Assembly: GCF_006345805.1 (NCBI RefSeq)
Contig: NC_043005.1
Coordinates: 54,002,001 to 54,066,000, forward strand
Length of the DNA stretch: 64,000 bases
DNA from: Octopus sinensis
Taxonomy: Eukaryota
Reading direction: 5' to 3'
Shown here: one piece after another, positions 894 to 61,090 of the stretch
How positions within the stretch are numbered: position 1 is the stretch's first letter
How the letters are laid out: every line of letters begins with the position of its first letter
The notes under the pieces: model-generated
Seen by the model: the letters and a program-made list of their open reading frames with translations, nothing else
Told to the model about the DNA's origin: nothing
Databases searched by the model: none
Position numbers and translations under genes: made by a program

Positions 894-1953
894 CAGTGTT
901 TAGACTAAATTTGACATTTTATATGAAAATAAACGAAAACACAATACCCCATCGAAAAATAATTGTATTTAAAAATATTTCAAATAGATTGAGGCTGAGA
1001 GATGTGAGTTAACTCAAAGTAGCGGCCTTCAGCTTCCACCATGATCTCAAGATGTGTCTGGAACCCGACGCATGTCTTCTTCACTGTTTAAGAAGGTTTT
1101 CGAACACCTTCTTGATCTTGGCCATCAGTTCTGCCTTGGTTTTGCAGGAAGAGAGGTTGGTGTCTTTCTAAACTCCTGATCCATAGGGTTATAATCGGAA
1201 GAGTTGGGAGGCCAGAAGTTGGGGCTGTTGAAGTCGAAAATATTTTCAGACAACCACTTCTAATTCTTCCTGGAAGTATGGCAAGGAACCGAATCCTGCT
1301 GCAATACCAATGTTCGTCGAGCAGCAACCCTCTCTCGTCAAGGTTTGACCACAACCTCCAGCAGCTTCACATAGCCACCTGAATTGAGCCTGAAGTCTCG
1401 TTCAAAGATGTGGGGATGAATCCTGGCGTGCAGACGAAGACAGAACGCCTACTGTATCCCTGCCTTCTGGCCACGGTTTCCTTTTTCTCCATTACAGCTG
1501 TCCGTGTCAGAGCTTACAGTTTCTGCAATGTTTACGAAGCATTGAGCAGCAGTCATAACATCAGTATCTTTATACCCGGCGCTAATCATCATGATACAGC
1601 TAACTCTTTTCCAATATTCAGATGGCTTCTAGTCCTCCTCACCAGCTAACTTTTTCTTAACTACAAACTTTAATCTTTATGCTTTTCAGTGATCTTTGAC
1701 TTCGTGAATGCATCAGAATATTCCTATATTTTTTCTACTCTAGACACAAGGCCTGAAATTTTGGGGGAGGGAGCTAGTCGATTAGATCGACTCCAGTACG
1801 CAACTGGTACTTAATTTATCGACCACGAAAGGATGAAAGGCAAAGTCGACCTCGGCAGAATTTGAGCTCAGAAGGTTAAGACAGAAAAAAACATCAAAAT
1901 ATTCCTGAAAAAGGAGACATAAACAAATTGTCAAATTTAGCCTAGATACCCTG
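894..1953 (-). mobile_element. Internally deleted Tc1/mariner-superfamily DD37D (maT-like) transposon
   Basis: Imperfect TIRs CAGTGTTTAGACTAAATTTGACA (894-916) and TGTCAAATTTAGCCTAGATACCCTG (1929-1953). Minus-strand QQDSVPCHTSRKN*KWLSENIFDFNSPNFWPPNSSDYNPMD has 37 residues between the last two Asp. Confidence 0.85.
1726..1891 (-). mobile_element. SINE family A, 5'-truncated, nested in the maT element
   Basis: Core CCTTTCATCCTTTCG..GGTCGATAAATTAAGTACCAG (reverse strand). 15-bp TSD CATCA(G/A)AATATTCCT at 1711-1725 and 1892-1906. Confidence 0.85.
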
Positions 1954-2467: not shown

Positions 2468-2619
2468 GAGTGGCTTTGTGGTAAGAAGCTTACATCCCAA
2501 CCACATGGTTCTGGGTTCAGTTCCACTGCATGGCACCTTAGGTTAGTGTCTTCTACTATAGCCTCAGGCCGACCAAAGCTTAGTGAGTGGATTTGGTAGA
2601 CGGAAACTGAAAGAAGCCC
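2468..2619 (+). mobile_element. SINE family B head (tRNA-derived, CORE-like segment)
   Basis: GTGGTAAG...GGGTTCAGTTCC box B, followed by GCACCTT-GG..AGTGTCTTCTACTATAGCC, which is shared with more than 10 copies in the window. Ends in (AT)n. Confidence 0.85.
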
Positions 2620-2629
2620 ATTTTGTGTA

Positions 2630-2690
<61 letters not shown>

Positions 2691-3213
2691 GTCAAATTTT
2701 ATCGCAATTTGACTTGTTTATATATATATATATATGAGGATGGAAATGAATTTGTATAATTCTAATCCAGAAACGCACCCATAATTAATCGAAGACTGTT
2801 TGATTTCGTTATTTTTCCTCTTTTTACCTATGTGAGTTACAAATATTGTTATCTGTGGAGTCTTATCTGTAGTAAAAAGAAATAAGCTGTTTTTTGGCTT
2901 CTATTTCTAAATTTTCGGTATGTGGTGAAGCAACTTGTTGCTTAACCCTTAATTATATTTATATTTCATAAGCACCAGTATAGGAACAAGGATCATATAG
3001 CCGTAAACTGTGAATTTTTATCTCACTGCAGCAGAAGCACAACCAACAGCAGACCGAATGAGAAGGGGTAACAACATCAACTGTGATCCTGTAGTGATGG
3101 AATCAACTGCGTTGCCCCATTTATTTTAATCGCAATATATATAAGGAAAAATGGACGAGTCCACATAAAACTCATACATGCCATGTAACTAGCAATTTTT
3201 AATTATTTAAGCA

Positions 3214-3286
3214 GCCGGGCTAGCTCAGTCAGTAGAGCATGAGACTCTTAATCTTGGGGTCGTGGGTTCGAGCCCCACGTTAGGCG
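3214..3286 (+). tRNA. tRNA-Lys-CTT: tRNA-Lys(CTT), variant or retroposed copy
   Basis: 73-nt cloverleaf GCCGGGC TA GCTC AGTCAGTA GAGC A TGAGA CTCTTAA TCTTG GGGTC GTGGG TTCGAGC CCCAC GTTAGGC G, close to the canonical metazoan tRNA-Lys-CTT. T5 terminator at 3291-3295. Confidence 0.9.
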
Positions 3287-3310
3287 TACGTTTTTATTGA
3301 GTTACTTTTT

Positions 3311-3729
3311 AAGGCGGCGAGCTGGCAAACACGTTAGCACGTCGGGCGAAATGCTTAGCGGTATTTCGTCTGCCGTTACGTTGCGAGTTCAAATTCCGCC
3401 GAGGTCGACTTTACCTTTCATTCTTTCGGGGTCGATAAATTAAGTACCAGTTACGCACTGGGGTCGATGTAATCGACTTAATATCTATGTCTGTCCTTGT
3501 TTGTCTTCTCTATGTTTAGCCCCTTGTGGGTAATAAAGAAATAGGTATTTCGTCTACCGTTACGTTCTGAGTTCAAATTCTGCCGAAGTCGACTTTGCCT
3601 TTCATCCTTTCGGGGTCGATTAAATAAATACCAGTTACGCACTGGGGTCGATGCAATCGACTTAATCCCTTTGTCCGTCCTTGTTTGTTCCCCCTATGTT
3701 TAGCCCCTTGTGGGCAATAAAGAAATAAG
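3311..3729 (+). mobile_element. SINE family A head-to-tail dimer
   Basis: AAGGCGGCGAGCTGGCA head, GAGTTCAAATTCC box B, tail ...AAAGAAATA. The second unit restarts at GGTATTTCGTCT (about 3544). Confidence 0.9.
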
Positions 3730-4530
3730 TTTTTAATTATTTAGGGAAATGTACAGCATTCTAATTTCAATTCCTGCTACAGATTTCAATGCATTCCTTC
3801 CATGCAGGGTCAGTAAAACAAGTAGTAGTTGCCCAATATTGGAATTCAAACTGTCATTTCCACTTTGCAGACTTGTGCCATTATAAGAAATCAATATTTA
3901 AATTAATCTGTAAGCAAGCATGCTGTCCTAGATTCGTACACTACATCCTTTCTGAATATATTTACAGCATTGAGAAATATGAAAGACGCTCCATGTGTAA
4001 ATGGGAAAACAATCTAGAGAACAAAAATATATATCAGATTTATTTATTTGGTTGTCTTATTTACAAAATGTGCCATTTATTTGAAAAAAGTAAAGATCGT
4101 GTAAAATAAAAAAAAATAGGCATTTATTGGAAAGATTAATATGTAGGAATACAGTTTAGTCTAGAATGAATATCTTTACAAGGTTTCTTTTCAACTGAAC
4201 ACTCGTTTTAGAAATGATTTGAGCTGTTGAAATAAACAGCTCCAAGGAATTAAAAAGCATGAACTCGAATGTTTACAACTGGAATGTATGTTTTTTTTCC
4301 TATTACCATTTTAAAATGTCAACTGAGATAAATATAATTTTTTTTTGTTTTATAAATGCCTTTATTTTTGTCTTTATGTATTCTTTATTTGTTTCTTTTT
4401 TTATTAGAATGATTATGTAAATTTTCAATACTGAAGTAAACAGATGCAAAAAAAAAAAAAAGAAAGTGAAAAACGAATGAGAAAAAGAAAACAAAATCTC
4501 ACTTTCGTGAATTAATACCAGGCCACTCAC

Positions 4531-5211: not shown

Positions 5212-5465
5212 AAATAAATGCACCCTTTTAAAGCCTAGCCAGGCTCATGGGCCCGGTTTCCCGGTCTCTATGGCATATGTGTTCCCCAGCTGGACAAGAC
5301 ACCAGTTCATCGCAGCATTACTCATTTTTGCCAGCTGAGTGGACTGGAGCAACGTGAAATGAAATGTTTGCTCAAGAACGCAACGTGTCACCTGGTCCAG
5401 AAATCAAAACCACAATCTTACGATCATGGTGCTGACACACTAACCATTAAGCCACACACCTCCAC
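5212..5465 (-). mobile_element. SINE family C (tRNA head, V-domain-like CTGCGATGGACTGG segment)
   Basis: Reverse complement of the full copy at 51300-51560. Confidence 0.85.
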
Positions 5466-5667
5466 TTGGAGGAAGGAAAAATACACTCAGCACCAGAGCT
5501 GAAGACATCTCTGAAGAGGGGTCCCTACCACATCGAAAACAATCTTACAATCATGGTGCTGACACCCTACCCATTAATCCACGCACCTCCACTTGGAGGA
5601 AGAAAAAATGCACTCAACACCAGAGCTAAAGACATCTCTGAAGAGGGATCCCTGCCACATAGAAAAC
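5413..5667. repeat. Local tandem duplication, about 127-bp unit x2
   Basis: CAATCTTAC(G/A)ATCATGGTGCTGACAC...CTCTGAAGAGGG(G/A)TCCCT(A/G)CCACAT occurs at 5413 and 5540 and spans a SINE/flank junction. Confidence 0.9.
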
Positions 5668-11067: not shown

Positions 11068-11265
11068 AAGGTGGTGAGCTGGCAGAACCGTTTACATGCC
11101 AGACAAAATTGCTCAGCTGCATTTTGACCGTCTTTATGTTCTGAGTTCAAATTCCACCAAAGTCAACTTTATCTTTCATCCTTTTGAGGTCAATAAAATA
11201 AGTACCAGTCATACACTGAGGTCAATGTAAATTGCTGACCTTGCACCAAAATTTGAAACCAATAT
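11068..11265 (+). mobile_element. SINE family A (older copy)
   Basis: AAGGTGGTGAGCTGGCAGAA...GAGTTCAAATTCC...TCTTTCATCCTTTTGAGGTCAATAAA. Confidence 0.85.
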
Positions 11266-11475
11266 TATTCTTTCACTTGTTTCAGTTATTTGGTTGTGAC
11301 CATGTTGTAGCACTGCCTTGAAGTGTTTTAGTTGAACAAATCAACCCCAGGACTTATTTCTTAACCCTAATACTTATTCTCTCCTGACATATCATTAAGA
11401 AAGTCCCATAGACTGCATGCCTCGCAAAGGCAGCGGTTTACCCATGACAAGATTAAGCATCCTAATGTGGATGCT

Positions 11476-16498: not shown

Positions 16499-17010
16499 GA
16501 CCTGTTGAAGCAAGTGAAATCGAAATCAAATTCGATGACAGCACCGCATGACTGGCATCCATGCTAGTGGAACACTAAGAGCACCATCCGAGCATGATCG
16601 TTGCCAGGGCTGCTGACTGGTTCCGGTGCCGGTGACACGTATAAAGCACCATTCGAGCGTGATCGTTACTAGTGTTGCCTTACTGGCTTTTGTGCCGATG
16701 GCACGTGAAAAACATTTGAGGTCGTTACCAATGCTGCTGGACCGGCTCCTGTGCAGGTGGCATGTAAAAAACACCATTTGAGCATGGCCGTTGCCAGAAT
16801 CGCCTGACTGGCCCTCATGCCGGTGACATGTAAAAGCACCCACTACACTCCCAGAGTGGTTGGCGTTAGGAAGGGCATCCAGCTGTAGAAACTCTTCCAG
16901 ATCAGATTGGAGTCTGGTGCAGCCATTTGGCTCTGCCAGTCCTCAGTCAAATCGTCCAACCCATGCCAGCGTGGAAAGCGGATGTTAAACGATAATGATG
17001 ATGATGGTGA
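16499..17010 (+). mobile_element. Retroposon family D (internal VNTR, (GAT)n tail)
   Basis: GACCTGTTGAAGCAAGTG head. Five degenerate units at 59-66-bp spacing (16551, 16616, 16682, 16741, 16807). GTGGTTGGCGTTAGGAAGGGCATCCAGCTGTAGAAA...GTTAAACGAT(GAT)n tail. Confidence 0.85.
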
Positions 17011-17557
17011 TATATATATTCAATATATATGTACACATACACATTCATATGAAGTTATAAGGTATACATATACATATATATGAAGTTATGAATAATAAGA
17101 GAAAATCGTATTATGAAATCTATTCAACCTTCAGGAATTCTTATATCACAACAATTGTTTTGTGACTTAAAACATGCAAAGATAATTTTTTCATTATATT
17201 TTAAAATAAGTGACTTACTATATATTCTACATGTTTTGTAAAATAATACATTAAGGAGCTTTTTTAATGAGTACCACTAGATTATTGTGGCTTAAATATA
17301 TATAACATATATATTTGTGAGCCCTAAAAAATCAAGCCCAAGACCTGAATCTAACATATCTAAATAGACCAACCTGTTTACAAAGTTTTACATGCATGAC
17401 TGAATTCTGAACAATAACACAACTCCAAATTTAATCAAAAGACAACCTTCTATAATATCTTTCTATAAGAACTTAACCTGCAACTTAATTATCATTCAAT
17501 GCAGCTCCACTTGCCCCAGAAAAAATAAGCTTACCAGAACCTATATATATATAAGCC

Positions 17558-22060: not shown

Positions 22061-22513
22061 TTAACTCTTCAACATTCAGATTCCTTGATCAAATGCAATG
22101 CTTATTTATTCATATTGTTTTGAATTAATTACATATTATCTCACAGATTTTGAGATTTTATTGATAAAATTGTTTATTTTTTTGAATAACATTGAAAAGT
22201 AAGTGTTAGAGTTTGGATGTGGCCAGTTTGAACATAAAACAAGATAGAATATTTAAGGTGGTGAGCTGGCAGAAACGTTAGCACGCTAGACGAAGTGCTT
22301 AGCGGTATTTCTGAGTTCAAATTCCGCTGAGGTCGACTTAGCCTTTCATCCTTTCGGGGTCGATAAATAAAGTACCAGTTACGCACTGGGGTCAATGTAA
22401 TCAACTTAATCCCTTTGTCTGTCCTTGTTTGTCGCCTCTATGTTTAGCCCCTTGTGGGCAATAAAGAAATAAGAATATTTGGGCCTGGTATGGCTGATTT
22501 AAATGTTAAAGGG
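22061..22513 (+). mobile_element. piggyBac-like MITE interrupted by a SINE A (22255-22471)
   Basis: TTAACTCTTCAACATT...AATGTTAAAGGG ends. SINE TSD AGAATATTT at 22246-22254 and 22472-22480. Confidence 0.8.
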
Positions 22514-22723
22514 CAGTCATGTGTGGCCAAAAGATTCTATGTGTTGTATGTTCAAACTGACTGGATCTGGCCTCTCGCACCTAGACTACAATGTCATTCT
22601 AAAAATAAACATGTGGCTACGTTGGAAGAAGCCTGCTTCTCAACCACATGATTCCAGGTTCAGTCCTACTGTGTGGCACTTCGGGCAAGTTTCTTCTATT
22701 ATAGCCTCATGAGTTGATTTGTG

Positions 22724-23236
22724 AAGACCTGTTGAAGCAAGTGAGGATCAGAATCGAAATCGATCAATGGAAATTGCAGATGTGTTACCAGTGCCAGTGG
22801 CATGTCGAAACTCTACTTGTGTAGACCCGTTGAGGCAAGTGAGGATCAGAATGGAAATCGATCAATGGAAATTGCAGATGTGTTACCAGTGCCGGTGGCA
22901 TGTAAGAGAACCTTCCGTTTCGCGACCGTTGCCAGCACCGCCCCGTTTCGTGTCCGTTGCCAGCCTCGCCTGGCCCTTGTGCCGGTGGCACATAAAAAGC
23001 ACCATCCGTTCGTGGCCGTTTGCCAGCTCTGTCTGGCACCTGTGCGCGTGGCACGTAAAAAGCACCCACTACACTCACGGAGTGGTTGGTGTTAGGAAGG
23101 GCATCCAGCCGTAGAAACACTGCCAGATTTGACTGGGCCTGATGAAGCCTTCTGGCTTCACAGACCCCAGTAGAACCGTCCAACCCATGCTAGCATGGAA
23201 AACGGACGCTAAACGACGATGATGATGATGATGATG
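22724..23236 (+). mobile_element. Retroposon family D with duplicated 5' unit
   Basis: GACC(T/C)GTTGA(A/G)GCAAGTGAGGATCAGAAT occurs twice about 100 bp apart, followed by VNTR units and a (GAT)n tail. Confidence 0.85.
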
Positions 23237-23362
23237 AAACTGAAAGAAGCCCATCATATATGCATACATATGTGTGTGTGTGCATTTATGTGTGTGTGTT
23301 TGTCACCCCATAGTCACTTGACAACTGATGTTGCTAAAAGGTTAAATATGGTACCATAGCAA

Positions 23363-27036: not shown

Positions 27037-27071
27037 TGTATGTATGTATGTATGCTGTGCTTCATTCATAT

Positions 27072-27307
27072 ATATTTCTTTACTACCCACAAAGGGCTAA
27101 ACATAGAGAGGACAAACAAGGACAGACAAAGGGATTAAGTCGATTACATCGACCCCAGTGCGAAACTGGTACTTTATTTATCGACCATGAAAGAATGAAA
27201 GGCAAAGTCGACCTTGGCGGAATTTGAACTCAGAACGTAATGACAGACGAAATACCGTTAAGCATTCCGCCCGGCGCGCTAACGTTTCTGCCAGCTCGCC
27301 GCCTTGA
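27072..27307 (-). mobile_element. SINE family A, full length, young
   Basis: Near-consensus with CpGs retained. 16-bp TSD TGT(G/A)CTTCATTCATAT at 27056-27071 and 27308-27323. Confidence 0.92.
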
Positions 27308-27404
27308 TGTACTTCATTCATATCCAGGTGTTGCATAGTGGCATTGAATTAAAAAAAACATGCTGTTGTGAAACAAACTTCCTAACCATGCAGCTAGGCC
27401 AGTT

Positions 27405-44509: not shown

Positions 44510-45500
44510 CTCACATTTGTCCTGACCCTAAATAAGGAGAGAATTAGTTGATTTCTGATATTTTAAGCATGTCTTTTTCTGTGAAGAAATCTGATGTGAA
44601 ATAGTACACTAGAAAATGTCAACTCTCACCTCTTTTCACGAATCATGTGCATATTGTTATATCAAGTGCCTTTTGCTACCAAAAAACCATCGTTAGTTGC
44701 CTCATGTTCAGTTCTGTTTTTAACTGTTTTTGGAATACTGATTGGTTCCTATTAATACATGCCTGAAATTCTGTACAACCTCACCTTTATATGCCCACAT
44801 ATATAAAATGCATTTTCTCCCGAAGACCATTGTTAGTTCCTTCAGATTCAATTCTTTTTTTAGCAGTTTTTTGAATAATGATTAACTGGCATACTGATTT
44901 CCACATTAGGTGAAATGCTTAGCGGTGTTCCATCCATTTTCACGTTCTGCAATGGTGCATGCCCTCACACTTGTCCTGACCTGAAATAAGGAGAGAGTTA
45001 ATTGATTTCTGATACTTCAGGCAAGTCTTTTCTAAGAAATCAGATGTGTAACCTTTCATGGTTGATAAAATAGATACCAGTTGAATATTGGGGACAATGT
45101 AATCAACTATCCACCTCCCCCAAATTTCAGGCCTTGTGCTTATAATAGAAAGGAGTATATACCTGGAATTCTGTACAACCTCACCTTTATATACTCCCAT
45201 ATCAAGTGCAATTTGCTACCAAAAACTATCATTAGTTCCCTCAGATTCATTTGTTTCTTAGCTATTTTTTGAATACTGGTTGGTTCCTAATTGTATGTAC
45301 CTGAATTTCTGTACGTTCTCACCTTTATATATACACATATATCAAGTGTTCTTCACTACCAAAGACCATTATTAGTTACCTCACATTCAGTTCTTTCCTT
45401 AGCAGTTTTTTGAATAGTGATGGGTAGTGATTAGTATATTCCTGAAATAGTGATTCCTGAAATTTTATACAATCTCACCTTTATATTCCAGCATATACCA
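44510..45500. repeat. Degenerate minisatellite, about 138-156-bp unit, about 5 copies in two blocks
   Basis: CTCACCT(TTATAT) anchors at 44625, 44780, 45180, 45318 and 45474. A separate 75-bp duplicate lies at 44512 and 44967. Confidence 0.8.
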
Positions 45501-46279
45501 AATGTGTGTGGTGACTGATAGATATTTCTGCCCAAGCTATGTTTTATTTAATTGACTTTCCATCAGAATATTTTGTATAGTGTTTGTTGATATAACGGCA
45601 ACTTAGCATGAAATATAATAACCAGCTGTGCTATGTCTGATGACATTTTAACTACAGTAGAAAACAACATAAGCTATGGCTACTGAAATAACTTCTTTGT
45701 TGTTTGTTATTTAGCACCTAGTCAGCCTTGATCAAGCAAGCCCATAAACAAAAGCTTTCCATTTATGGCCATACAACGTCATTTTTTTCCTGTTTTAAAG
45801 ATATATTTAGGACTATATTATTCAACGTGCCCAGCACTTCTTTAAGACAGTAGGGTGTAATGTGAGGGAGATTTAGCTGTTATTTCTTGAAAATTTATTT
45901 ACCACATAGAGGTTTATTTATTCCCTTCCTTGCAAGTATATAAATCCTTCTTTATTTGGTTGTAACCAGGAAACTGGATCTATTATCCTTATTATGCTAT
46001 AACCTGGAAACAATCTCACAGTGATTAAAATATGTTCACATATTTTTACGTGTACCAGTTTAATGTATCACACACTAATACATATTTACACATATATACA
46101 CATGCATAAATGCAAGGAGATTTCTTTTCAAGGTATTAAAAGCTCTTCTTTGTTCTGTTTTAATGTATTTGAATTTTAATTTTTGCATAATCCTTTGGTT
46201 TTTATATTTTATATTTTAAACCAGTTAAGACAAGTGACACCTCTTTCTCTCCCTCTCTCTAGCAATATTTTCATCTTCC

Positions 46280-46711
46280 TAAGGTGGCGAGCTGGCAGAG
46301 TCGTTAGCACGCCGGGTGAAATACTTAGCAGTATTTCGTCTGCCGCCATGTTCTGAGTTCAAATTCCACCAAGGTCGACTTTGCCTTTCATCCTTTCGGG
46401 GTCGATAAATTAAGTACCAGTTACACACTGGGGTCGCTGTAATCGACTTAATCCCTTTGTCTGTCCTTGTTTGTCCCCTCTATGTTTAGCCCCTTGTGGG
46501 CAATAAAGAAATAAGAAACATTAGCATGCTGGATGAAATGCTTAGCTATATTTCATCTGTCTTTATGTTCTGATTTCAAATTCCACCAAGGTCAACTTTG
46601 CCTTTCATCCTTTCAGGGTTGATAAATTAAGTACCAGCTGCATACTGCGGTCGATCTAATTGACCGGCCCCTTTCCCCAAAATTTCGAGCCTTGTGCCTA
46701 GAGTAGAAAAG
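46280..46711 (+). mobile_element. SINE family A dimer bounded by one TSD
   Basis: 16-bp AATATTTTC(A/C)TCTTCC at 46264-46279 and 46712-46727. Confidence 0.88.
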
Positions 46712-46835
46712 AATATTTTCCTCTTCCAGTAAGGACAATTGCTTTACATGAATATTTTTACCAGCAGTTAAAAAAACAAAAACAAAAAAAATATAGCAGA
46801 CCAGAGGAAATTAATTTTTTTTTATTTTGTCAGAA

Positions 46836-47120: not shown

Positions 47121-47454
47121 CTGATGGAGTGCCAGTCATAATACATCAATATTTGAAATCTTAGTGTTCAGCAACATAACTCTACTCATAATGACACATG
47201 ACCAGGAATTTATGGGGAAGTGACAGCCAGTGTAAAAAGATATGAGCAAGGAAATGATTACAGATGGCATTGAACTTGAGAAAAATATCTTGGAATAATG
47301 GTTAGTGTCAGATTAAGAGATGGATGTTCCAAAAGCGGGAAGATAAGTAGGTTGGGTTGTCTGATTGGTGGAGGTAGGAGACAAACCAGTCAACTCTGAG
47401 GAACAGAGGCCATTTACACAGTCGTACCTGCACGTTATTATCATTGTTATATCT

Positions 47455-47668
47455 AAGGTGGTGAACTGGCAGAAACATTAGCACACCAGGCAAATTGCTT
47501 AGTAGTATTTGTCTGTCTGTATGTTCTGAGTTCAAATTCCGCTGAGGTCAACTTTGCCTTTCATCCTTTCAGGGTAGATAAATTAAGTACCAGTCACGTA
47601 CTGGGGTTGATCTAATCGACTGGCCCCCTCCCCTAAAATTTCAGGCCTTGTGCCTAGAGTAGAAAAAA
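47455..47668 (+). mobile_element. SINE family A
   Basis: 17-bp TSD TTATCATTGTTATATCT at 47438-47454 and 47669-47685. Confidence 0.9.
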
Positions 47669-49031
47669 TTATCATTGTTATATCTGAGCTAAATAGGGAG
47701 TTTCCTTGAGGTCAATTAACCTACTAGAAATAGCAAACAAGTTTCCTTGAAATCAAACCTGCCATCCATAAATAAGAAAGGAATCCATTAGATAATGTAG
47801 GTCAACACAGAGAAAATCTGTGACTCAATAGTTAGGTTGTAGGAATCCCGATCATAGGATCACAGATTCAATTCTTAGGCCTGGCAGCATGTTGTGTTCT
47901 TGGACAAGACTCTTCATTTCCTTGCAAAAGCAGGATGTTCATGGCCTTTGATGGCAATGGCACACTAGTTTTGATGAGTCCTACATACCCCTAGAAAGAT
48001 GGGAGAATGATGGTACGAATGTATCTGATCACAAGTCTGTCTTATCAGAGTTGACCTAGGGTTAAAAATTCCTTGACAACAACAATAATATTATGTGTGT
48101 TATACTACTTTTACAAGGAACGTATCAAGCAATAAAAACACTTCAAATGCATCAGCTGCTGCTTGCAGTACAGATATTTTAGTTGTAATAGTTGTAGCTA
48201 AACTGAACTAATTCCTTACAAAAGCCCTTATATCAAAAGGTGATGCCTTTATCTCACTTAACTCAATAAATTCCCATGTAATGGATTAAATTTCTAAGCA
48301 ACGAGTTACAGATTAAAAAACAAAAAAAAAAACAGTCGTTATATTGCTATGCAGGTAAAAAAAAATTCTTTTTAAAGTGTCAATATTTATTTTAAAACAA
48401 CAAAATTTTTACTACTACTACTACTACTACTGCTAATAATAATAATAATAATAATAATGTTATTTATTGTATTTTTTATTTTTATTTTATTTTCCTACAT
48501 GTGTTTATTTATTTTTTTCCAAGAGTTATTAAATAATTTAAACGATTCCCACGATTCTCTCTGTTTAATGATTCAAGGTTAATGGCTTAAATTAAAAAGG
48601 ACATGGTAATTACTGCATGATCTGTTTAATAGAGCATGCAGTAATTTGCTAATGCTTCATTTGAGTACAACTTCAGCGATTTTTTTTTATACTCATCATC
48701 TGTGTTTTGGCTCAGGTGAATGAACAGGGTTATAATAAATTTATGACAAAAAAAAAAAACAAGAAAAAAAAAACATTTAAATGAATAATGCAAGCAAAGA
48801 AGAGAAAAGAAAAGAAAAAACAAACAAAAATAAGGAAAATAATTAAATGTAATTTCTAGTTTCATGCCAATTTTTAATGCTTTCTCTGTAGACATTTTAA
48901 ATTTACAGCATATGTTACAGAGTGGTACTAATTTCTCAGAGAAATTTAATGCTTTTAATTAAAGGAACAGGATTAATCAACCACACATATATCTATTATA
49001 TGTACATACACATGCACACACACGCACACAC

Positions 49032-49654: not shown

Positions 49655-50246
49655 AAAACATTACTCATAGAGTATACAAGAAAAGACATGACAACCTAGG
49701 GAGAGTAACCCACTGGGAGTTATGTAGAAAGATAGGATTTGAACATACTGATAAATGGTACGAACATGAACCTAGTAAAGTACTAGAATGTAAGAAATAG
49801 AAGTTATTGTGGGACTTTAACATTCAGACTGGCAGAGTAATAGAAGCTAGAAGGCCTGATTTAGCAGTAGTAGATAAAGAGAATATAAAGTGCCAGGTAA
49901 TTGACTTTACAGTCCCAAATGATGAAAAAAAATCAATATGAGAGGTATAAAATAATAGCAAAGTACCAGGACCTAGCCATTGAATTGCAGAGACCATGGA
50001 AAGTGCAGGTAAAAATGTATCCCAGTAGTTATAGGTGCAATGGAAACTATAGCTAAAGATTTGAACAGATGGTTACAGGAAATAGGTTTTTAACCTCTTG
50101 ATATGAGATCACCATGTCGTGCACATATGGTTGTGATGCATATGCCTGGTGTACCCTTATCAGACAGGTAGTCATGATGGGTATTCTGGGCTTTGTATAT
50201 TATTTACCCCAGTATCACTTTGATGGCATGCTCTGCTCTCTAACTC

Positions 50247-50308
<62 letters not shown>
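49655..50308 (+). mobile_element. R4/Dong-like LINE RLE fragment with 3' tail and (TAA)n
   Basis: YKKRHDNLGRVTHWELCRKIGFEHTDKWYEHEPSKVLE..LLWDFNIQTGRVIEARRPDLAVVDKE..CQVIDFTVP..KYQDLAIELQR.W..PVVIGAM. Classic RLE motifs. Confidence 0.9.
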
Positions 50309-50310
<2 letters not shown>

Positions 50311-50700
50311 CCAGCGCCGCCTCGACTGGCTTCCGTGTCGTTGGCACATAAAAAGCACCTTCCGAATCATAGCCGAAGCCAGTGCCGCCTTGACTGGCTT
50401 CCATAAAATGCACCATCCGAATTGTGGCCGATGCCAGTGCTGCCTCGACTGGCTTCCATAAAATGCACCAATCCGATCGTGGCCGATGCCAGCCTCGCCT
50501 GGCACCAGTGCAGGTGGCACGTAAAAAGCACCCACTACACTCACGGAGTGGTTGGCGTTATGAAGGCATCCAGCTGTAGAAACTTTGCCAGATAAGACCG
50601 GAGCCTGGTGCAGCCTTCTGGCTTCCCAGATCCCCGGTCGAACCGTCCAACCCATGCTAGCATGGAGAACGGACGTTAAACGATGATGATGATGATGAGG
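50309..50700 (+). mobile_element. Retroposon family D, 5'-truncated, in the (TAA)n tail
   Basis: GACTGGCTTCC..AAAA.GCACC units and a (GAT)n tail. Confidence 0.85.
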
Positions 50701-51299
50701 ATGAATGATAATCTGTATTTATGCTCTTGAAGAAGCATAATCATCACAATATCTCACATCTTCATAACTTTGAAGTTCTATATAAAAAAAATTTAATTCT
50801 TTCAAAACCTAATGAAATTTTTGAGATCATCATACCTCACATGATCCACTGAATCAGAAATGTAGATGAACATCTATGACTAGTGTATTGCAGCTTAACA
50901 GAATTTACTCCTTTCTCAGGAATATCAACTGGATAGATTTATTTCAACATACTTGTTAATTTCATTGTTTTCTGTATTTACCTCAACAAGTTGTTCTTGA
51001 CTTGTAGATCCAGTTTTAGATCAGAACAGCTCCAATTGAATTCTAATGTCTTGAACACATACAATGTGATGCAAACTTTCCACTTAATGTCTGACATTTT
51101 GTTTACTTAGATGTCATCACCAAAGCTTAATTCTAGCTTCTATACCATTTAACGATTAGTAATCGACAATTCTACTTAATCATTTATTATTTTTTTTTCA
51201 TTGTAACATGAATATATTCTGGAATATTTATATAAAAAACATTGGATAATAGCTATTTCTTCTTTTATTAATAATTCTTATGTATTATTATATATGAGA

Positions 51300-57162: not shown

Positions 57163-57191
57163 ATGTATGTTTATATATATATGAATATATC

Positions 57192-58120
57192 ATTATCATC
57201 CTTCTTTTATGTCCATTTTCCATGCTGGCATGGGTTGAAAACTGGTAAACTGAGGAGTTCCACCGGGTCCCAGTCTTATTTGGCATGGTTTCAATGGCTG
57301 AATGCCCTTCCTAATACCAAACTCTCCAAGAGAGTAGTGGGTGCTTTTTACATGCCACCAGCATGGGTGCCAGTTATGTAACACCAGCATCAGCCACAAC
57401 TATGCACAGTGTATCACAAACGATGTCAGTCACTTGCCACTGCCTCTGTGAGGCCCAACATTCAAAGGGTGCTTTCACATGCCACCAACAACCGTGTTTG
57501 TTCCTTCTCGAGTAATGTCTGGCTCATAAGGGCCAGTTTCCTTGTTTCCTTGGCGTACAGGTTCCCCACCTGGACGGGACGCCAGTCTGGCGCAGGTGAG
57601 CTGCAAGATGCAGGAGGAAAGAGTGAGAGTAAGTTGTGGCGAAAGAGTCAGCAGAACTTTGCCATTATCTTCTGCTGGAGCCACATGGAGCTTAGGTGTT
57701 TCGCTCATTAACACACACATCACCCGGTCTGAGATTCGAATCCACGATCCCTCGACCATGAGTCCACTACTCTAACCACTAGGCCATGTGCCTCCATGGC
57801 ATCAACCATGACTATGATCTCACTTGGCTTGACAGGTCTTGTCAAGCACAGTATATTGCCAAAGGTTTCTGTCAAGCACAGCATATTGCCAAAAGCTTCT
57901 GTGAGGGCCAACATTCGAAGGGTACTTTTTATGTGCCACCAGCATGGGTACCATTTACATAACACTGACATCGTTTATGACTACGATTTCACTTGGCTTG
58001 ACAGGTCTTCTCAAGCATGGCATACCACCTAATGTTTGAAGTGTGCTTTTTACGTGCCACCAGCATGGGTGCCTGTTATGCAACACTGGCAGTGGCCATG
58101 AGTACGATATCACTTGCCTT
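57192..58120 (-). mobile_element. Retroposon family D with nested SINE E (about 57493-57796)
   Basis: (CAT)n + CCATGCTGGCATGGGTTG tail. Repeated GATTTCACTTGGCTTGACAGGTC units at about 57815, 57985 and 58105. Confidence 0.8.
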
Positions 58121-59582: not shown

Positions 59583-60289
59583 TGCATGTGTGTATATATA
59601 TATATATATATAAATGCATGTGTATATATATATATATATATTTAACTTGATTTGTAGCAAATAAACCATTGGCCACAGTTCTACTTTGTTGCATATTAGT
59701 CCAGTTAATGAAATTTACTATTCAAACTAACTGCTTTATTAAATTTAATTGCAATCAGCAAGAAATAAATCAAGTTCATTATAAATGAAAATTGTAACTG
59801 TAATTATATTTTTAATTTAATAACCCAGAAATTTTTTTTTGCCATGTTTTAAATTCAATTTGTCATTTTCTGCACCTCTTAAAACAGGTTCAATGCTGAG
59901 TATAATGTTTAATATTTGCACTTTGAATGTGAGAACGTCCTCCACAAAAGTAAATGAGGTTACTGTCTCTTTTCGTTTATAAGAACATATAACATCTTAT
60001 TAATGAGATAAGAACTAAAGGTAATAAATATTTTGTGAAAGTAGGAAGACATGTAATGTGAACGGTGCTAATTTTGGTAAGAATTAGTTGATTGTTGCAC
60101 TGCACGCTGTGATTCTACAGATGTAAATGTTGTGCTAAATTAGATGATAGGAAATAATAATGAATGAAATTAATGAGAGATAGTCTCTAAATAGTTCTTT
60201 GACATGCTAGAAATAGCATCCAAATATCCCTGAAACTACTTCCTATTTTCAGAAAGCAAAAAGAACATATTGAATAATGTGATTTCACA

Positions 60290-60505
60290 TATTGGTTTCA
60301 AATTTTGGCATAAGGCCAGCATGTTCGAGAGGAGTAGGGAAATCCATTGCATCAGCCCCAGGGCTCAGCTAGTACTTATTTTATCAACTCTAAAAGGATG
60401 AAAGGCAAAGGTGACCCCGGCAGAATATGAACTCAGAACATAAAGACAAACAAAATGCTACTGAGCATTTCACCTAGCATGCTAATGATTCTGCCAGCTC
60501 ACTGC
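60290..60505 (-). mobile_element. SINE family A (older)
   Basis: GGATGAAAGGCAAAGG.GACC.CGGCAGAAT.TGAACTCAGAAC...CTGCCAGCTC. Confidence 0.8.
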
Positions 60506-60759
60506 CTTACTAGACTGAAATATTAGCCTTATGCCTGTTGGGTTCCTTTTTTTAACTCTTTATATCCAATTTTCCCATGTTAGCATGATTTAGAAAAAAT
60601 TGTGATAGTAGTATTCTATGACTTAGGTAATCTTCCTCTTACCAATCTCTGTTTTATGTAAACTTGTTATTCATTTAGCTAAGCCCATGATGAACTCCAA
60701 AATGGCTTGTGATATTGGGATTTGTTTATTTTTTCATTCTAGGCTTAAACAATAATACC

Positions 60760-61090
60760 ACATTAACCCCAGTGCATAACTGGTAGGTACTTCATTGACC
60801 CTGAATGGATGAAAGTGACAAAGCTCACTTTGGCAGAATTTGAACTCAGAACAAAAAGCCAGAAGAAATGCCTATTTCTTTTCTACCCACAAGGGGCTAA
60901 ACACAGAGGGAACAAACGGATTAAGTCGATTATATAGACCCCAGTGCGTAACTGGTACTTATGTTATCGACCCAAAAAGGATGAAAGGCAAATTCGACCT
61001 TGGCGGAATTTGAACTCAGAACAAAATGCCAGAAGAAACGCCATTAATCATTTTGTCCAGTATGCTAATGATTCTGCCAGTATGCTGTCT
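60760..61090 (-). mobile_element. SINE family A dimer or nested pair
   Basis: Two GAATTTGAACTCAGAAC units. Junction GAAATGCC|TATTTCTTT at about 60872. Confidence 0.8.

What the first reader, a model, noticed from the sequence alone, without database searches (positions are those of the whole stretch)
3196..3743. tRNA-Lys plus SINE dimer enclosed by a single 14-bp direct repeat: candidate co-retrotransposed tRNA-SINE chimera
Seen: TTTTTAATTATTTA occurs at 3196-3209, 4 nt before the tRNA, and again at 3730-3743, immediately after the SINE-A tail. Other SINE-A copies here have 9-17-bp TSDs of the same style. The enclosed unit is a 4-nt leader, a tRNA, a trailer with T5, and a SINE-A dimer, which is what a read-through Pol III pre-tRNA transcript would contain. 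Inference: a tRNA gene was mobilised using a downstream SINE's LINE-recognition tail. This would be a route for tRNA-gene dispersal, or a snapshot of the birth of a new SINE. Alternative: the SINE alone inserted at TTTTT/AA (7-bp TSD) and the longer match is chance in AT-rich DNA. The CpG-enriched upstream flank could also indicate a native locus.
Basis: partly seen in the sequence, partly recalled or inferred. Interest (0 to 1): 0.75.

Follow-up and report, generated by a model that had tools for sequence, protein, structure and literature searches.

The report
Pre-tRNA fused to SINE retrocopy
A decayed lysine tRNA gene copy, still carrying its short leader and terminator trailer, sits fused to a dimeric SINE inside one 14-bp target-site duplication, most likely because both were pasted into the genome in a single retrotransposition event; this is a tidy example of a known process, not a new one.

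Summary
TTTTTAATTATTTA occurs only twice in the 64-kb window. One copy ends 4 nt before a tRNA-Lys(CTT); the other starts right after a SINE tail. Chance expectation is about 1e-6 to 1e-5.

Refinements:
- The SINE starts at AAGG (3311), so a SINE-only duplication is just TTTTT (5 bp). Other copies have 9, 16, 18 and 18 bp.
- The trailer has two T5 terminators.
- The "dimer" junction recurs at another locus, so the dimer is an inherited SINE form.
- The tRNA differs at 5 of 73 positions from canonical Lys-CTT, including a broken acceptor pair and loss of G18. That 6.8% matches the SINE copies (5.0-6.5% from consensus), so it is a pseudogene of SINE age.

Best reading (about 0.4): a single retrotransposition event in which the reverse transcriptase finished the SINE RNA and switched onto the U-tail of a Pol III pre-tRNA transcript.

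Rivals:
- Two nested insertions at the same nick (about 0.2).
- A native but decayed tRNA gene plus a chance repeat (about 0.1).

No cephalopod DNA was reachable, so the ortholog and paralog tests could not be run. I found no support for a new SINE family. Moderate interest.

The parts
3196..3209 (+). 5' copy of the 14-bp direct repeat TTTTTAATTATTTA (candidate target-site duplication)
   Evidence: Exact match to 3730-3743; the only two occurrences in the window; sharp edges.
3210..3213 (+). 4-nt leader AGCA (candidate 5' leader of a Pol III primary transcript, starting with a purine)
   Evidence: Lies between the repeat and tRNA position 1. That it marks a transcription start is an inference from general knowledge of pre-tRNA leaders.
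3214..3286 (+). tRNA-Lys(CTT) copy, probably a pseudogene
   Evidence: ARAGORN. Rfam RF00005 scores 53.1 bits, with pair 4-69 flagged as non-standard. It differs at 5 of 73 positions (C4G, G18A, C42T, A43G, G69A) from the published human tRNA-Lys(CTT) (PMC8216282; comparison). Cloverleaf energy is -20.7 against -28.0 kcal/mol.
3287..3310 (+). 3' trailer TACGTTTTTATTGAGTTACTTTTT with two Pol III terminator-like T5 runs (3291-3295, 3306-3310); no CCA
   Evidence: The second T5 directly abuts the first base of the SINE.
3311..3544 (+). SINE unit 1, full length (starts AAGGCGGCGAGCTGGCA, ends AAAGAAATAG)
   Evidence: Alignment with six other heads and tails in the window. It lies 6.0% from the window consensus. 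It has no TSD of its own.
3545..3729 (+). SINE unit 2, 5'-truncated (starts GTATTTCG, ends AAAGAAATAAG)
   Evidence: It lies 5.4% from the consensus. The unit1/unit2 junction is identical to that of the dimer at about 60865-60881.
3730..3743 (+). 3' copy of the 14-bp direct repeat. Its first five bases (TTTTT) also match 3306-3310, immediately upstream of the SINE.

Best explanation
This is a chimeric retrocopy made in one target-primed reverse-transcription event.

Proposed steps:
1. A LINE-encoded enzyme nicked the target at the left edge of TTTTTAATTATTTA.
2. It began reverse transcription on the 3' tail of a dimeric SINE RNA and copied it to its 5' end (AAGG...).
3. It then switched template onto the 3' oligo-U end of a nuclear Pol III primary transcript of a tRNA-Lys(CTT) gene. 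That transcript had terminated at the gene's second T5 run.
4. It copied that transcript back to its start site, 4 nt upstream of the mature tRNA.
5. Staggered second-strand cleavage 14 bp away produced the duplication.

The tRNA copy was not under selection afterwards and decayed at the same rate as the SINEs.

Shown: the anatomy, the improbability of the repeat by chance, the family's TSD lengths, a second composite insertion with a single TSD, and the equal ages.

Inferred: the order of events, the template switch itself, and that the leader and trailer ends are transcript ends.
For: 1. The 14-mer is exact, unique to these two sites, sharp-edged and improbable by chance (1e-6 to 3e-5).
2. 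Fourteen bp falls within this family's TSD range of 9, 16, 18 and 18 bp. A SINE-only TSD would be only 5 bp.
3. The enclosed tRNA segment has the boundaries of a Pol III primary transcript. It has a purine-initiated 4-nt leader, no CCA, and an end inside a T5 run that abuts the SINE's canonical first base.
4. One-event composites do occur with this machinery. The full A-type unit plus 5'-truncated B-type unit at 46281-46711 is enclosed by a single 16-bp TSD, and neither unit has a TSD of its own.
5. The ages agree. The tRNA lies 6.8% (JC 0.072) from canonical Lys-CTT. The SINE units lie 5.4-6.0% from their consensus and the other copies 5.0-6.5%. The canonical sequence is documented in PMC8216282, PMC10878346 and PMC10341043.
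6. The tRNA is structurally damaged, with a G4-A69 mismatch and G18 changed to A. It is therefore not a selected native gene.
7. Precedent in Doucet 2015 (PMC4476161): U6 and U6atac are thought to be favoured switch acceptors because they are nuclear Pol III transcripts ending in U-stretches. LINEs of the stringent clades (L2, RTE) make only chimeras, never stand-alone copies. A U6atac/Alu chimera with a 14-nt TSD exists.
8. Further precedent: a switch from SINE RNA to tRNA was proposed for the origin of PittSINE (PMC5729268).
9. The SINEs here lack poly(A) and carry three interchangeable tails on a common head and body. This fits tail-specific (stringent) LINE partners.
Against: 1. The TTTTT immediately upstream of the SINE equals the first 5 bases of the 14-mer (7 bases if the SINE's own AA is counted). 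A SINE-only insertion predicts this. Under the one-event model it is a coincidence, since T5 starts at 0.6% of window positions. The alternative is an ad hoc assumption that the SINE RNA's own U-tail annealed to the target.
2. The acceptor transcript must have read through the first T5 (3291-3295).
3. The four clear TSDs of other copies all begin with A, whereas this one begins with T.
4. No empty site, source gene or second copy could be examined. No cephalopod DNA is present in any reachable collection.
5. The partner LINE is not in the window, so its stringent character is inferred.
6. The canonical tRNA used for comparison is vertebrate, not cephalopod.
Confidence: 0.4

Rival explanations
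1. Read-through or 5' transduction. At a source locus, a SINE dimer had inserted just after the second terminator of a tRNA-Lys gene. A rare Pol III transcript started at the tRNA start site, ran through both T5 runs and the SINE, and was retrotransposed through the SINE tail, producing the 14-bp TSD here.
For: It accounts for the same 14-bp TSD, leader and age agreement as the best explanation. The SINE dimer contains no T4 or longer run, so Pol III could traverse it. If the SINE at the source had a TTTTT duplication, the downstream copy would terminate the transcript. Its U-tail could then anneal to a target beginning TTTTT, which would explain the T5 identity without any coincidence (inference).
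Against: Two consecutive T5 terminators must be read through. The model gives no reason why the tRNA segment should end exactly in a T-run at the SINE's first base, unless the source insertion had an unusually short 5-bp TSD. The other SINE copies show no T-run between tail and TSD, so U-tail priming is not the norm for this family. No source locus was seen: there is one tRNA in 64 kb, and nothing outside the window is reachable.
Confidence: 0.2
2. Two nested events at the same nick. First, a pre-tRNA transcript alone was retro-copied as a tailless retropseudogene, with its U-tail annealing to the AAAAA-3' primer at the nick. This gave the 14-bp TSD. Later, a SINE dimer inserted at the junction between the retrocopy and its 3' TSD, duplicating TTTTT.
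For: It explains both the 14-mer and the T5 identity without coincidence. It also explains why the TSD begins with T5, through microhomology with a U-tail. Doucet 2015 notes that tripartite structures can arise from a second insertion into the 3' end of the first (PMC4476161). A short TSD is not unheard of in this family, given the 9 bp at 22255.
Against: It needs a second insertion at exactly the same phosphodiester bond. SINE density is about 9 loci per 64 kb, or roughly 1.4e-4 per bp. A 5-bp TSD would be shorter than all four measured ones. Stringent-clade LINEs are reported to make only chimeras and not stand-alone small-RNA copies (PMC4476161). The tRNA and the SINE show the same age, which the model allows but does not predict.
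Confidence: 0.2
3. A native tRNA-Lys gene that later decayed, with a SINE dimer inserted after its back-up terminator (TTTTT duplication). The upstream 14-mer would then be a chance match in AT-rich DNA.
For: The T5 identity is what a SINE-only insertion gives. Two downstream T5 runs and an AT-rich upstream region are normal for native tRNA genes (general knowledge). The upstream flank is relatively CpG-rich, with observed/expected 0.64-0.72 against 0.39 for the window.
Against: It requires an exact 14-mer flanking the tRNA before the insertion, with probability 1e-6 to 3e-5. The left copy would also have to sit, by chance, where a Pol III start site would be. The tRNA is not canonical: 5 of 73 differences, a broken acceptor pair and loss of G18. 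CpG retention extends into the inserted SINE units themselves, at 21/22 against 34/50 in other copies (p = 0.014), so CpG richness does not mark an ancient native locus.
Confidence: 0.1

Closest known systems
U6/LINE and U6atac/Alu template-switch chimeras (Buzdin 2002-2003; Garcia-Perez 2007; Doucet 2015, PMC4476161)
   Same: A full-length small Pol III transcript ending in its U-stretch is fused, in the same orientation, to the 5' side of a LINE or SINE sequence. One TSD encloses the whole; the U6atac/Alu case has a 14-nt TSD. L2 and RTE clade LINEs are also reported to make such chimeras.
   Different: Here the acceptor is a pre-tRNA with leader and trailer rather than U6. The donor is a full-length dimeric, non-poly(A) SINE rather than a 5'-truncated L1. 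The host is a cephalopod-like genome. The enzyme is unidentified.
PittSINE origin model (Suh et al. 2017, PMC5729268) and the Gilbert-Labuda / Ohshima-Okada model of SINE birth
   Same: A reverse-transcriptase switch from a SINE (or LINE) RNA onto a tRNA during target-primed reverse transcription, giving a tRNA-headed chimera flanked by a TSD.
   Different: In PittSINE the new tRNA replaced the old head and founded a family. Here the tRNA is added in front of an intact SINE head, is separated from it by two terminators, and there is no evidence of amplification.
tRNA/LINE-1 chimeric insertions in primates (bioRxiv 10.1101/2025.02.02.635956)
   Same: tRNA sequence and a retroelement inside one 9-19-bp TSD.
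   Different: Those are mostly half-length tRNAs in antisense orientation, attributed to twin priming. This one is a complete tRNA in sense orientation with precursor leader and trailer.
Tailless retropseudogenes of small RNAs (Schmitz et al. 2004, cited in PMC4476161)
   Same: TSD-flanked retrocopies of tRNA or small RNAs without a poly(A) tail. This is the first step of the two-step rival explanation.
   Different: That class was described for L1 in mammals. Here a SINE lies between the tRNA unit and the 3' TSD.
5' transduction by L1/SVA
   Same: An upstream promoter drives a transcript that carries 5' flanking sequence along with the element to a new site, within one TSD.
   Different: It would need Pol III to read through two T5 terminators. 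It is not documented for tRNA-SINE pairs in anything I could read.

Membership tests
Template-switch chimeric retrocopy (U6/LINE type) | One target-site duplication encloses both parts | tested here: met
   Exact 14-bp repeat at 3196-3209 and 3730-3743, unique in the window, with chance probability 1e-6 to 3e-5.
Template-switch chimeric retrocopy (U6/LINE type) | Both parts in the same orientation, with the small RNA on the 5' side | tested here: met
   The tRNA (+) lies upstream of the SINE units (+).
Template-switch chimeric retrocopy (U6/LINE type) | The small-RNA part runs from its transcription start to its 3' end (U-stretch) at the junction | tested here: inconclusive
   The sequence fits: a leader AGCA starting with a purine, and a trailer ending in T5 that abuts the SINE base A3311. 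However, the transcript ends of the source gene are not known.
Template-switch chimeric retrocopy (U6/LINE type) | Neither part has a TSD of its own | tested here: inconclusive
   Unit 1 and unit 2 have none, but the SINE dimer as a whole is flanked by TTTTT/TTTTT (5 bp).
Template-switch chimeric retrocopy (U6/LINE type) | Empty site (one copy of the TSD, no insert) in an allele or related species | not testable with these tools
   No cephalopod DNA is present in the reachable collections. The flanks are unique in the window.
Functional native tRNA-Lys(CTT) gene | Canonical cloverleaf with standard pairs and conserved G18/G19 | tested here: not met
   G4-A69 is flagged as non-standard by Infernal. 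G18 is A. There are two G-U pairs in the anticodon stem. Cloverleaf energy is -20.7 against -28.0 kcal/mol.
Functional native tRNA-Lys(CTT) gene | Sequence identity with the conserved animal isodecoder | tested here: not met
   5 of 73 differences from human tRNA-Lys(CTT) (PMC8216282). The 5' half of that sequence is identical in mouse and zebrafish. The cephalopod reference itself was not available.
Functional native tRNA-Lys(CTT) gene | Scores above the Rfam tRNA threshold, with a downstream T-run terminator | tested here: met
   53.1 bits against a gathering score of 29. T5 begins 5 nt after the tRNA.
New tRNA-headed SINE family (founder or member) | Several copies of the same unit with different flanks | tested here: not met
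   Within the window only: one tRNA, and the leader-tRNA-trailer unit has no other match. A genome-wide test was not possible.
New tRNA-headed SINE family (founder or member) | Pol III can transcribe from the head through the body (no internal terminator) | tested here: not met
   Two T5 runs lie between the tRNA and the SINE.
5' transduction / read-through retrocopy | A source locus with the same contiguous sequence and different flanks | not testable with these tools
   None in the window. No genome was reachable.
CORE-type tRNA-derived SINE with LINE-derived tail (octopus OR1-like) | tRNA-like head with A and B boxes, conserved body, variable LINE-type 3' tail, TSDs | tested here: inconclusive
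   The window shows a common head and body with three tail types and 9-18-bp TSDs. Similarity to the CORE domain or OR1 is only recalled from memory; no reference sequence was available (PMC4824008 names OR1 as an octopus CORE-SINE).

The most novel reading that the evidence does not exclude
The unit may not be a dead one-off. It could be, or descend from, a transcribed composite in which a retro-copied tRNA-Lys promoter sits in front of a dimeric SINE. On this reading, the unusual CpG retention across the upstream flank, tRNA and SINEs reflects Pol III/TFIIIC occupancy, and further copies exist genome-wide. That would be a nascent tRNA-Lys-headed SINE lineage, or a real route of tRNA-gene dispersal in cephalopods.
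Probability: 0.07. Interest if true: 0.65.

Novelty: new member of a known kind. Interest (0 to 1): 0.4.

Why it matters
Models of SINE birth and of head or tail swapping rest on reverse-transcriptase template switching onto Pol III transcripts. Most of the evidence comes from family consensus sequences or from mammalian U6/L1 chimeras.

A single locus that still keeps the leader, the full tRNA and the terminator trailer joined to a SINE's first base would be a direct snapshot. It would show a nascent pre-tRNA being used as the acceptor. It would do so in a mollusc, with a non-poly(A) SINE that is probably served by a stringent LINE.

The locus also points to a simple genome-wide screen: look for a Pol III transcript, a T-run and a SINE head inside one TSD. 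Such a screen could measure how often this happens in SINE-rich cephalopod genomes. As a single unverified locus it does not change current understanding.

Tried and rejected
Attempts to reach external data:
1. Orthologous or allelic locus through protein space. The 106-aa spurious ORF at 3789-4109 was not on record and had no homologue.
2. Paralogous units through the frame that stays open across tRNA, trailer and SINE head. No homologue was found, so the protein collections hold no cephalopod SINE translations.
3. A metagenome scan for a Lys-type tRNA 3' end, a 10-40-nt gap and the SINE head. It gave two hits. Both are GC-rich bacterial coding sequence and are chance matches.
4. A viral-contig scan for the SINE core found nothing.
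5. Paralogous empty-site proxy. The flanks at 2730-3195 and 3744-4400 are unique in the window.
6. A partner LINE in the window. There is none; all long ORFs are microsatellite translations or other repeats.

Ideas rejected:
- The dimer as a fresh double template switch. The same junction recurs at 60865-60881.
- CpG-rich flank as evidence for a native tRNA. The inserted SINEs share the CpG retention.
- Tandem duplication or a DNA-transposon origin for the repeat. Nothing matches beyond 14 bp and there are no inverted ends.
- The Rfam pestivirus 3'UTR hit at 2505-2683. It is a (TA)n artefact, scoring 37 bits against a gathering score of 90.

Correction: my first coordinates for the SINE start (3321/3323) were wrong by 10-12 nt. 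They were corrected.
Full report
**What is there**

The window is AT-rich (33.7% G+C), rich in microsatellites, and has no credible coding gene. The locus reads as follows.

| Coordinates | Feature |
|---|---|
| 3196-3209 | TTTTTAATTATTTA, 5' copy of the repeat |
| 3210-3213 | AGCA leader |
| 3214-3286 | tRNA-Lys(CTT) (ARAGORN; Rfam 53.1 bits) |
| 3287-3310 | Trailer TACGTTTTTATTGAGTTACTTTTT, with T5 runs at 3291-3295 and 3306-3310 |
| 3311-3544 | Full-length SINE unit, from AAGGCGGCG... to ...AAAGAAATAG |
| 3545-3729 | 5'-truncated second unit, from GTATTTCG... to ...AAAGAAATAAG |
| 3730-3743 | TTTTTAATTATTTA, 3' copy of the repeat |

My first coordinates for the SINE start were off by 10-12 nt. 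I corrected them.

**Is the repeat more than chance?**

- The 14-mer occurs only at these two places, on either strand.
- It is not low-complexity by a periodicity filter.
- Only one 1-mismatch relative exists in 64 kb.
- There is no similarity on either side of the two copies.
- Its probability at a given position is 1e-7 (order-3 Markov) to 2.3e-7 (independent bases).
- Allowing any leader of 1-15 nt gives 1.4e-6 to 3.5e-6. Allowing 130 positions gives 1.3e-5 to 3e-5.
- Simulated sequences carry 1.48 comparable pairs within 600 bp per 64 kb.
- In the real window, such pairs are mostly SINE-internal matches, tandem repeats or true TSDs.

Chance is a poor explanation.

**The SINE family and how it inserts**

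Seven heads in the window begin AAGGYRGYGA immediately after their 5' flank. The AA at 3311-3312 therefore belongs to the element. Copies share the head and body but carry three different 3' tails, and none has poly(A).

| SINE head | Strand | TSD | Coordinates |
|---|---|---|---|
| 22255 | + | 9 bp | 22246-22254 / 22472-22480 |
| 27305 | - | 18 bp, 2 mismatches | 27306-27323 / 27054-27071 |
| 47455 | + | 18 bp | 47437-47454 / 47668-47685 |
| 46281 (composite) | + | 16 bp, 1 mismatch | 46264-46279 / 46712-46727 |

The composite at 46281-46711 is a full A-type unit joined to a 5'-truncated B-type unit. Neither unit has a TSD of its own. This machinery therefore does produce multi-template insertions in a single event.

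The dimer at the locus under study has the same unit1/unit2 junction (AAAGAAATAG|GYATTTC) as an older dimer at about 60865-60881, which has different flanks. The dimer is most simply an inherited SINE form, not a fresh fusion.

For the SINE dimer alone, the best TSD is TTTTT (5 bp). That is shorter than every measured TSD in the family.

**The tRNA**

- It differs at 5 of 73 positions (C4G, G18A, C42T, A43G, G69A) from the published human tRNA-Lys(CTT) (PMC8216282; comparison).
- The 5' half of that reference is identical in mouse and zebrafish (PMC10878346 and PMC10341043).
- Infernal flags pair 4-69 as non-standard.
- The near-universal G18 is lost.
- The cloverleaf is 7 kcal/mol weaker than the reference.
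- There is no CCA, so the template was a gene or a precursor and not a mature tRNA.
- The 6.8% divergence (JC 0.072) matches the SINE units here (5.4-6.0%) and the other A-type copies (5.0-6.5%).
- It also matches the SINE/LINE expansion at JC 0.065 reported for Octopus vulgaris (PMC13282606).

The tRNA therefore looks like a sequence that has drifted neutrally for about as long as the SINEs. Caveat: the reference tRNA is vertebrate, because no cephalopod reference was reachable.

**How it most likely arose**

The tRNA segment has the limits expected of a Pol III primary transcript. It starts with a purine 4 nt upstream, and it ends inside a T5 run that touches the SINE's first base.

The simplest mechanism that predicts these limits and a single 14-bp TSD has three steps:
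1. Target-primed reverse transcription starts on the SINE tail.
2. It runs to the 5' end of the SINE RNA.
3. It then switches end-to-end onto the oligo-U 3' end of a nascent pre-tRNA.

Doucet et al. (PMC4476161) make several relevant points:
- U6 and U6atac are thought to be favoured switch acceptors because they are nuclear Pol III transcripts with U-stretches.
- L2 and RTE clade (stringent) LINEs make only chimeras, never stand-alone small-RNA copies.
- A U6atac/Alu chimera with a 14-nt TSD exists.

A switch from SINE RNA to tRNA was proposed for the origin of PittSINE (PMC5729268). I give this reading about 0.4.

**What argues against it, and the rivals**

The main difficulty is that TTTTT at 3306-3310 equals the first five bases of the 14-mer. 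A SINE-only insertion predicts this. In the one-event model it is a coincidence, since T5 begins at 0.6% of window positions. The only alternative is that the SINE RNA's own U-tail annealed to the target, and the other copies show no sign of that.

Three rivals remain.

It can explain the T5 identity through a source-locus TSD that acts as terminator and then as a microhomology tail. It must pass two T5 terminators, and it gives no reason for the T-run at the junction.

2. **Two nested events (about 0.2).** A tailless pre-tRNA retrocopy with the 14-bp TSD comes first. A SINE dimer then inserts at the very same nick with a 5-bp TSD. This explains everything without coincidence. It needs a second hit on one phosphodiester bond, when SINE density is about 1.4e-4 per bp. 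It also needs an unusually short TSD and a kind of stand-alone copy that stringent LINEs are reported not to make.

3. **Native but decayed tRNA gene plus a SINE-only insertion and a chance 14-mer (about 0.1).** It is penalised by the 1e-6 to 3e-5 chance figure. The left copy would also have to sit, by chance, where a start site would be.

A rough count favours one event over two steps by roughly 3-40 fold, unless the site is a strong insertion hot spot. These weights are inference, not measurement.

**Claims not supported**

Nothing indicates a new SINE family or a general route of tRNA dispersal:
- There is one tRNA in the window.
- The leader-tRNA-trailer unit has no second copy in the window.
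- The tRNA is damaged.
- Two terminators separate the tRNA promoter from the SINE body.

**A side observation on the "native locus" idea**

- The two SINE units here keep 21 of 22 ancestral CpGs, with sites defined only from other loci. The other copies keep 34 of 50 (p = 0.014).
- With a looser site definition the figures are 26/30 against 35/61 (p = 0.008).
- Their non-CpG divergence is the same as that of the other copies.
- The upstream flank has CpG observed/expected of 0.64-0.72, against 0.39 for the window.

The CpG-rich patch therefore includes the inserted elements. It is a property of the locus after insertion, perhaps germline hypomethylation or Pol III factor occupancy. It is not evidence that the tRNA is native.

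**Limits**

No cephalopod DNA or protein could be reached:
- Exact and homology protein look-ups failed.
- The metagenome scan returned two bacterial chance hits.
- The viral scan returned nothing.
- The flanks are unique in the window.

The decisive tests (empty site, source gene, copy number) are therefore listed as next steps. The host species and the partner LINE were not identified. Any resemblance of the SINE body to CORE/OR1 SINEs is recalled from memory only.

**Verdict**

It is best read as a chimeric retrocopy of a pre-tRNA and a dimeric SINE. That makes it a new instance of a known kind of event, of moderate interest (0.4).

Noticed in passing
window 46264-46727: A composite insertion. 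A full A-type SINE (46281-46515) is joined to a 5'-truncated B-type SINE (46516-46711), and a single 16-bp TSD (AATATTTTCmTCTTCC) encloses both. Neither unit has a TSD of its own. This is direct evidence of multi-template insertions by this machinery.
   Followed up: yes
window about 60700-61090 (- strand), junction 60865-60881: An older SINE dimer whose unit1/unit2 junction (AAAGAAATAG|GCATTTC) is identical to the junction at 3535-3551. This implies a dimeric SINE form that transposes as a unit. Its second unit has a different, partly deleted tail.
   Followed up: partly
window 2996-3729: A CpG-protected patch. The SINE units at 3311-3729 keep 21/22 ancestral CpGs against 34/50 in the copies at 22255, 27305 and 46281 (p = 0.014), although non-CpG divergence is equal. 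The upstream flank has CpG observed/expected of 0.64-0.72, against 0.39 for the window and 0.33 downstream. Possible germline hypomethylation or Pol III factor occupancy.
   Followed up: partly
window 11068-11266 (+), 47455-47668 (+), 60289-60508 (-), 1768-1885 (-): SINE copies share the AAGG head and the central body but carry three different 3' tails: A ...AATAAAGAAATAAG, B ...GCCTTGTGCCTAGAGTAGAAAAA and C ...CCAAAATTTGAAACCAATATT. This suggests tail swapping between LINE partners. The two C-type copies have no recognisable TSD.
   Followed up: partly
window 22990-23240, 50457-50705, 16744-17011, 57189-57373: Another interspersed repeat family (73-87% identity between copies). It gives similar spurious ORFs (...EARRLHQA...NHSVSVVGAFYVP...) at 22785-23183 and 50245-50655, and is associated with short tandem duplications (98-bp period at 22719-22903; 55- and 123-bp periods at 50319-50480). 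Its identity is unknown.
   Followed up: no
window 5423-5650 and 44672-45473: Tandem or segmental direct repeats unrelated to the SINE: a 127-bp period at 5423-5650, and several 14-26-bp exact repeats at spacings of about 140-540 bp in 44672-45473.
   Followed up: no
window 2505-2683: The Rfam 'Pestivirus 3'UTR' match (37 bits, against a gathering score of 90) is a (TA)n microsatellite artefact and not a viral sequence.
   Followed up: yes
L001 2143-2182; L002 6934-6973: The two metagenome contigs that matched the tRNA-end plus SINE-head pattern are near-identical GC-rich bacterial sequences. The match is coincidental, with no tRNA and no SINE.
   Followed up: yes
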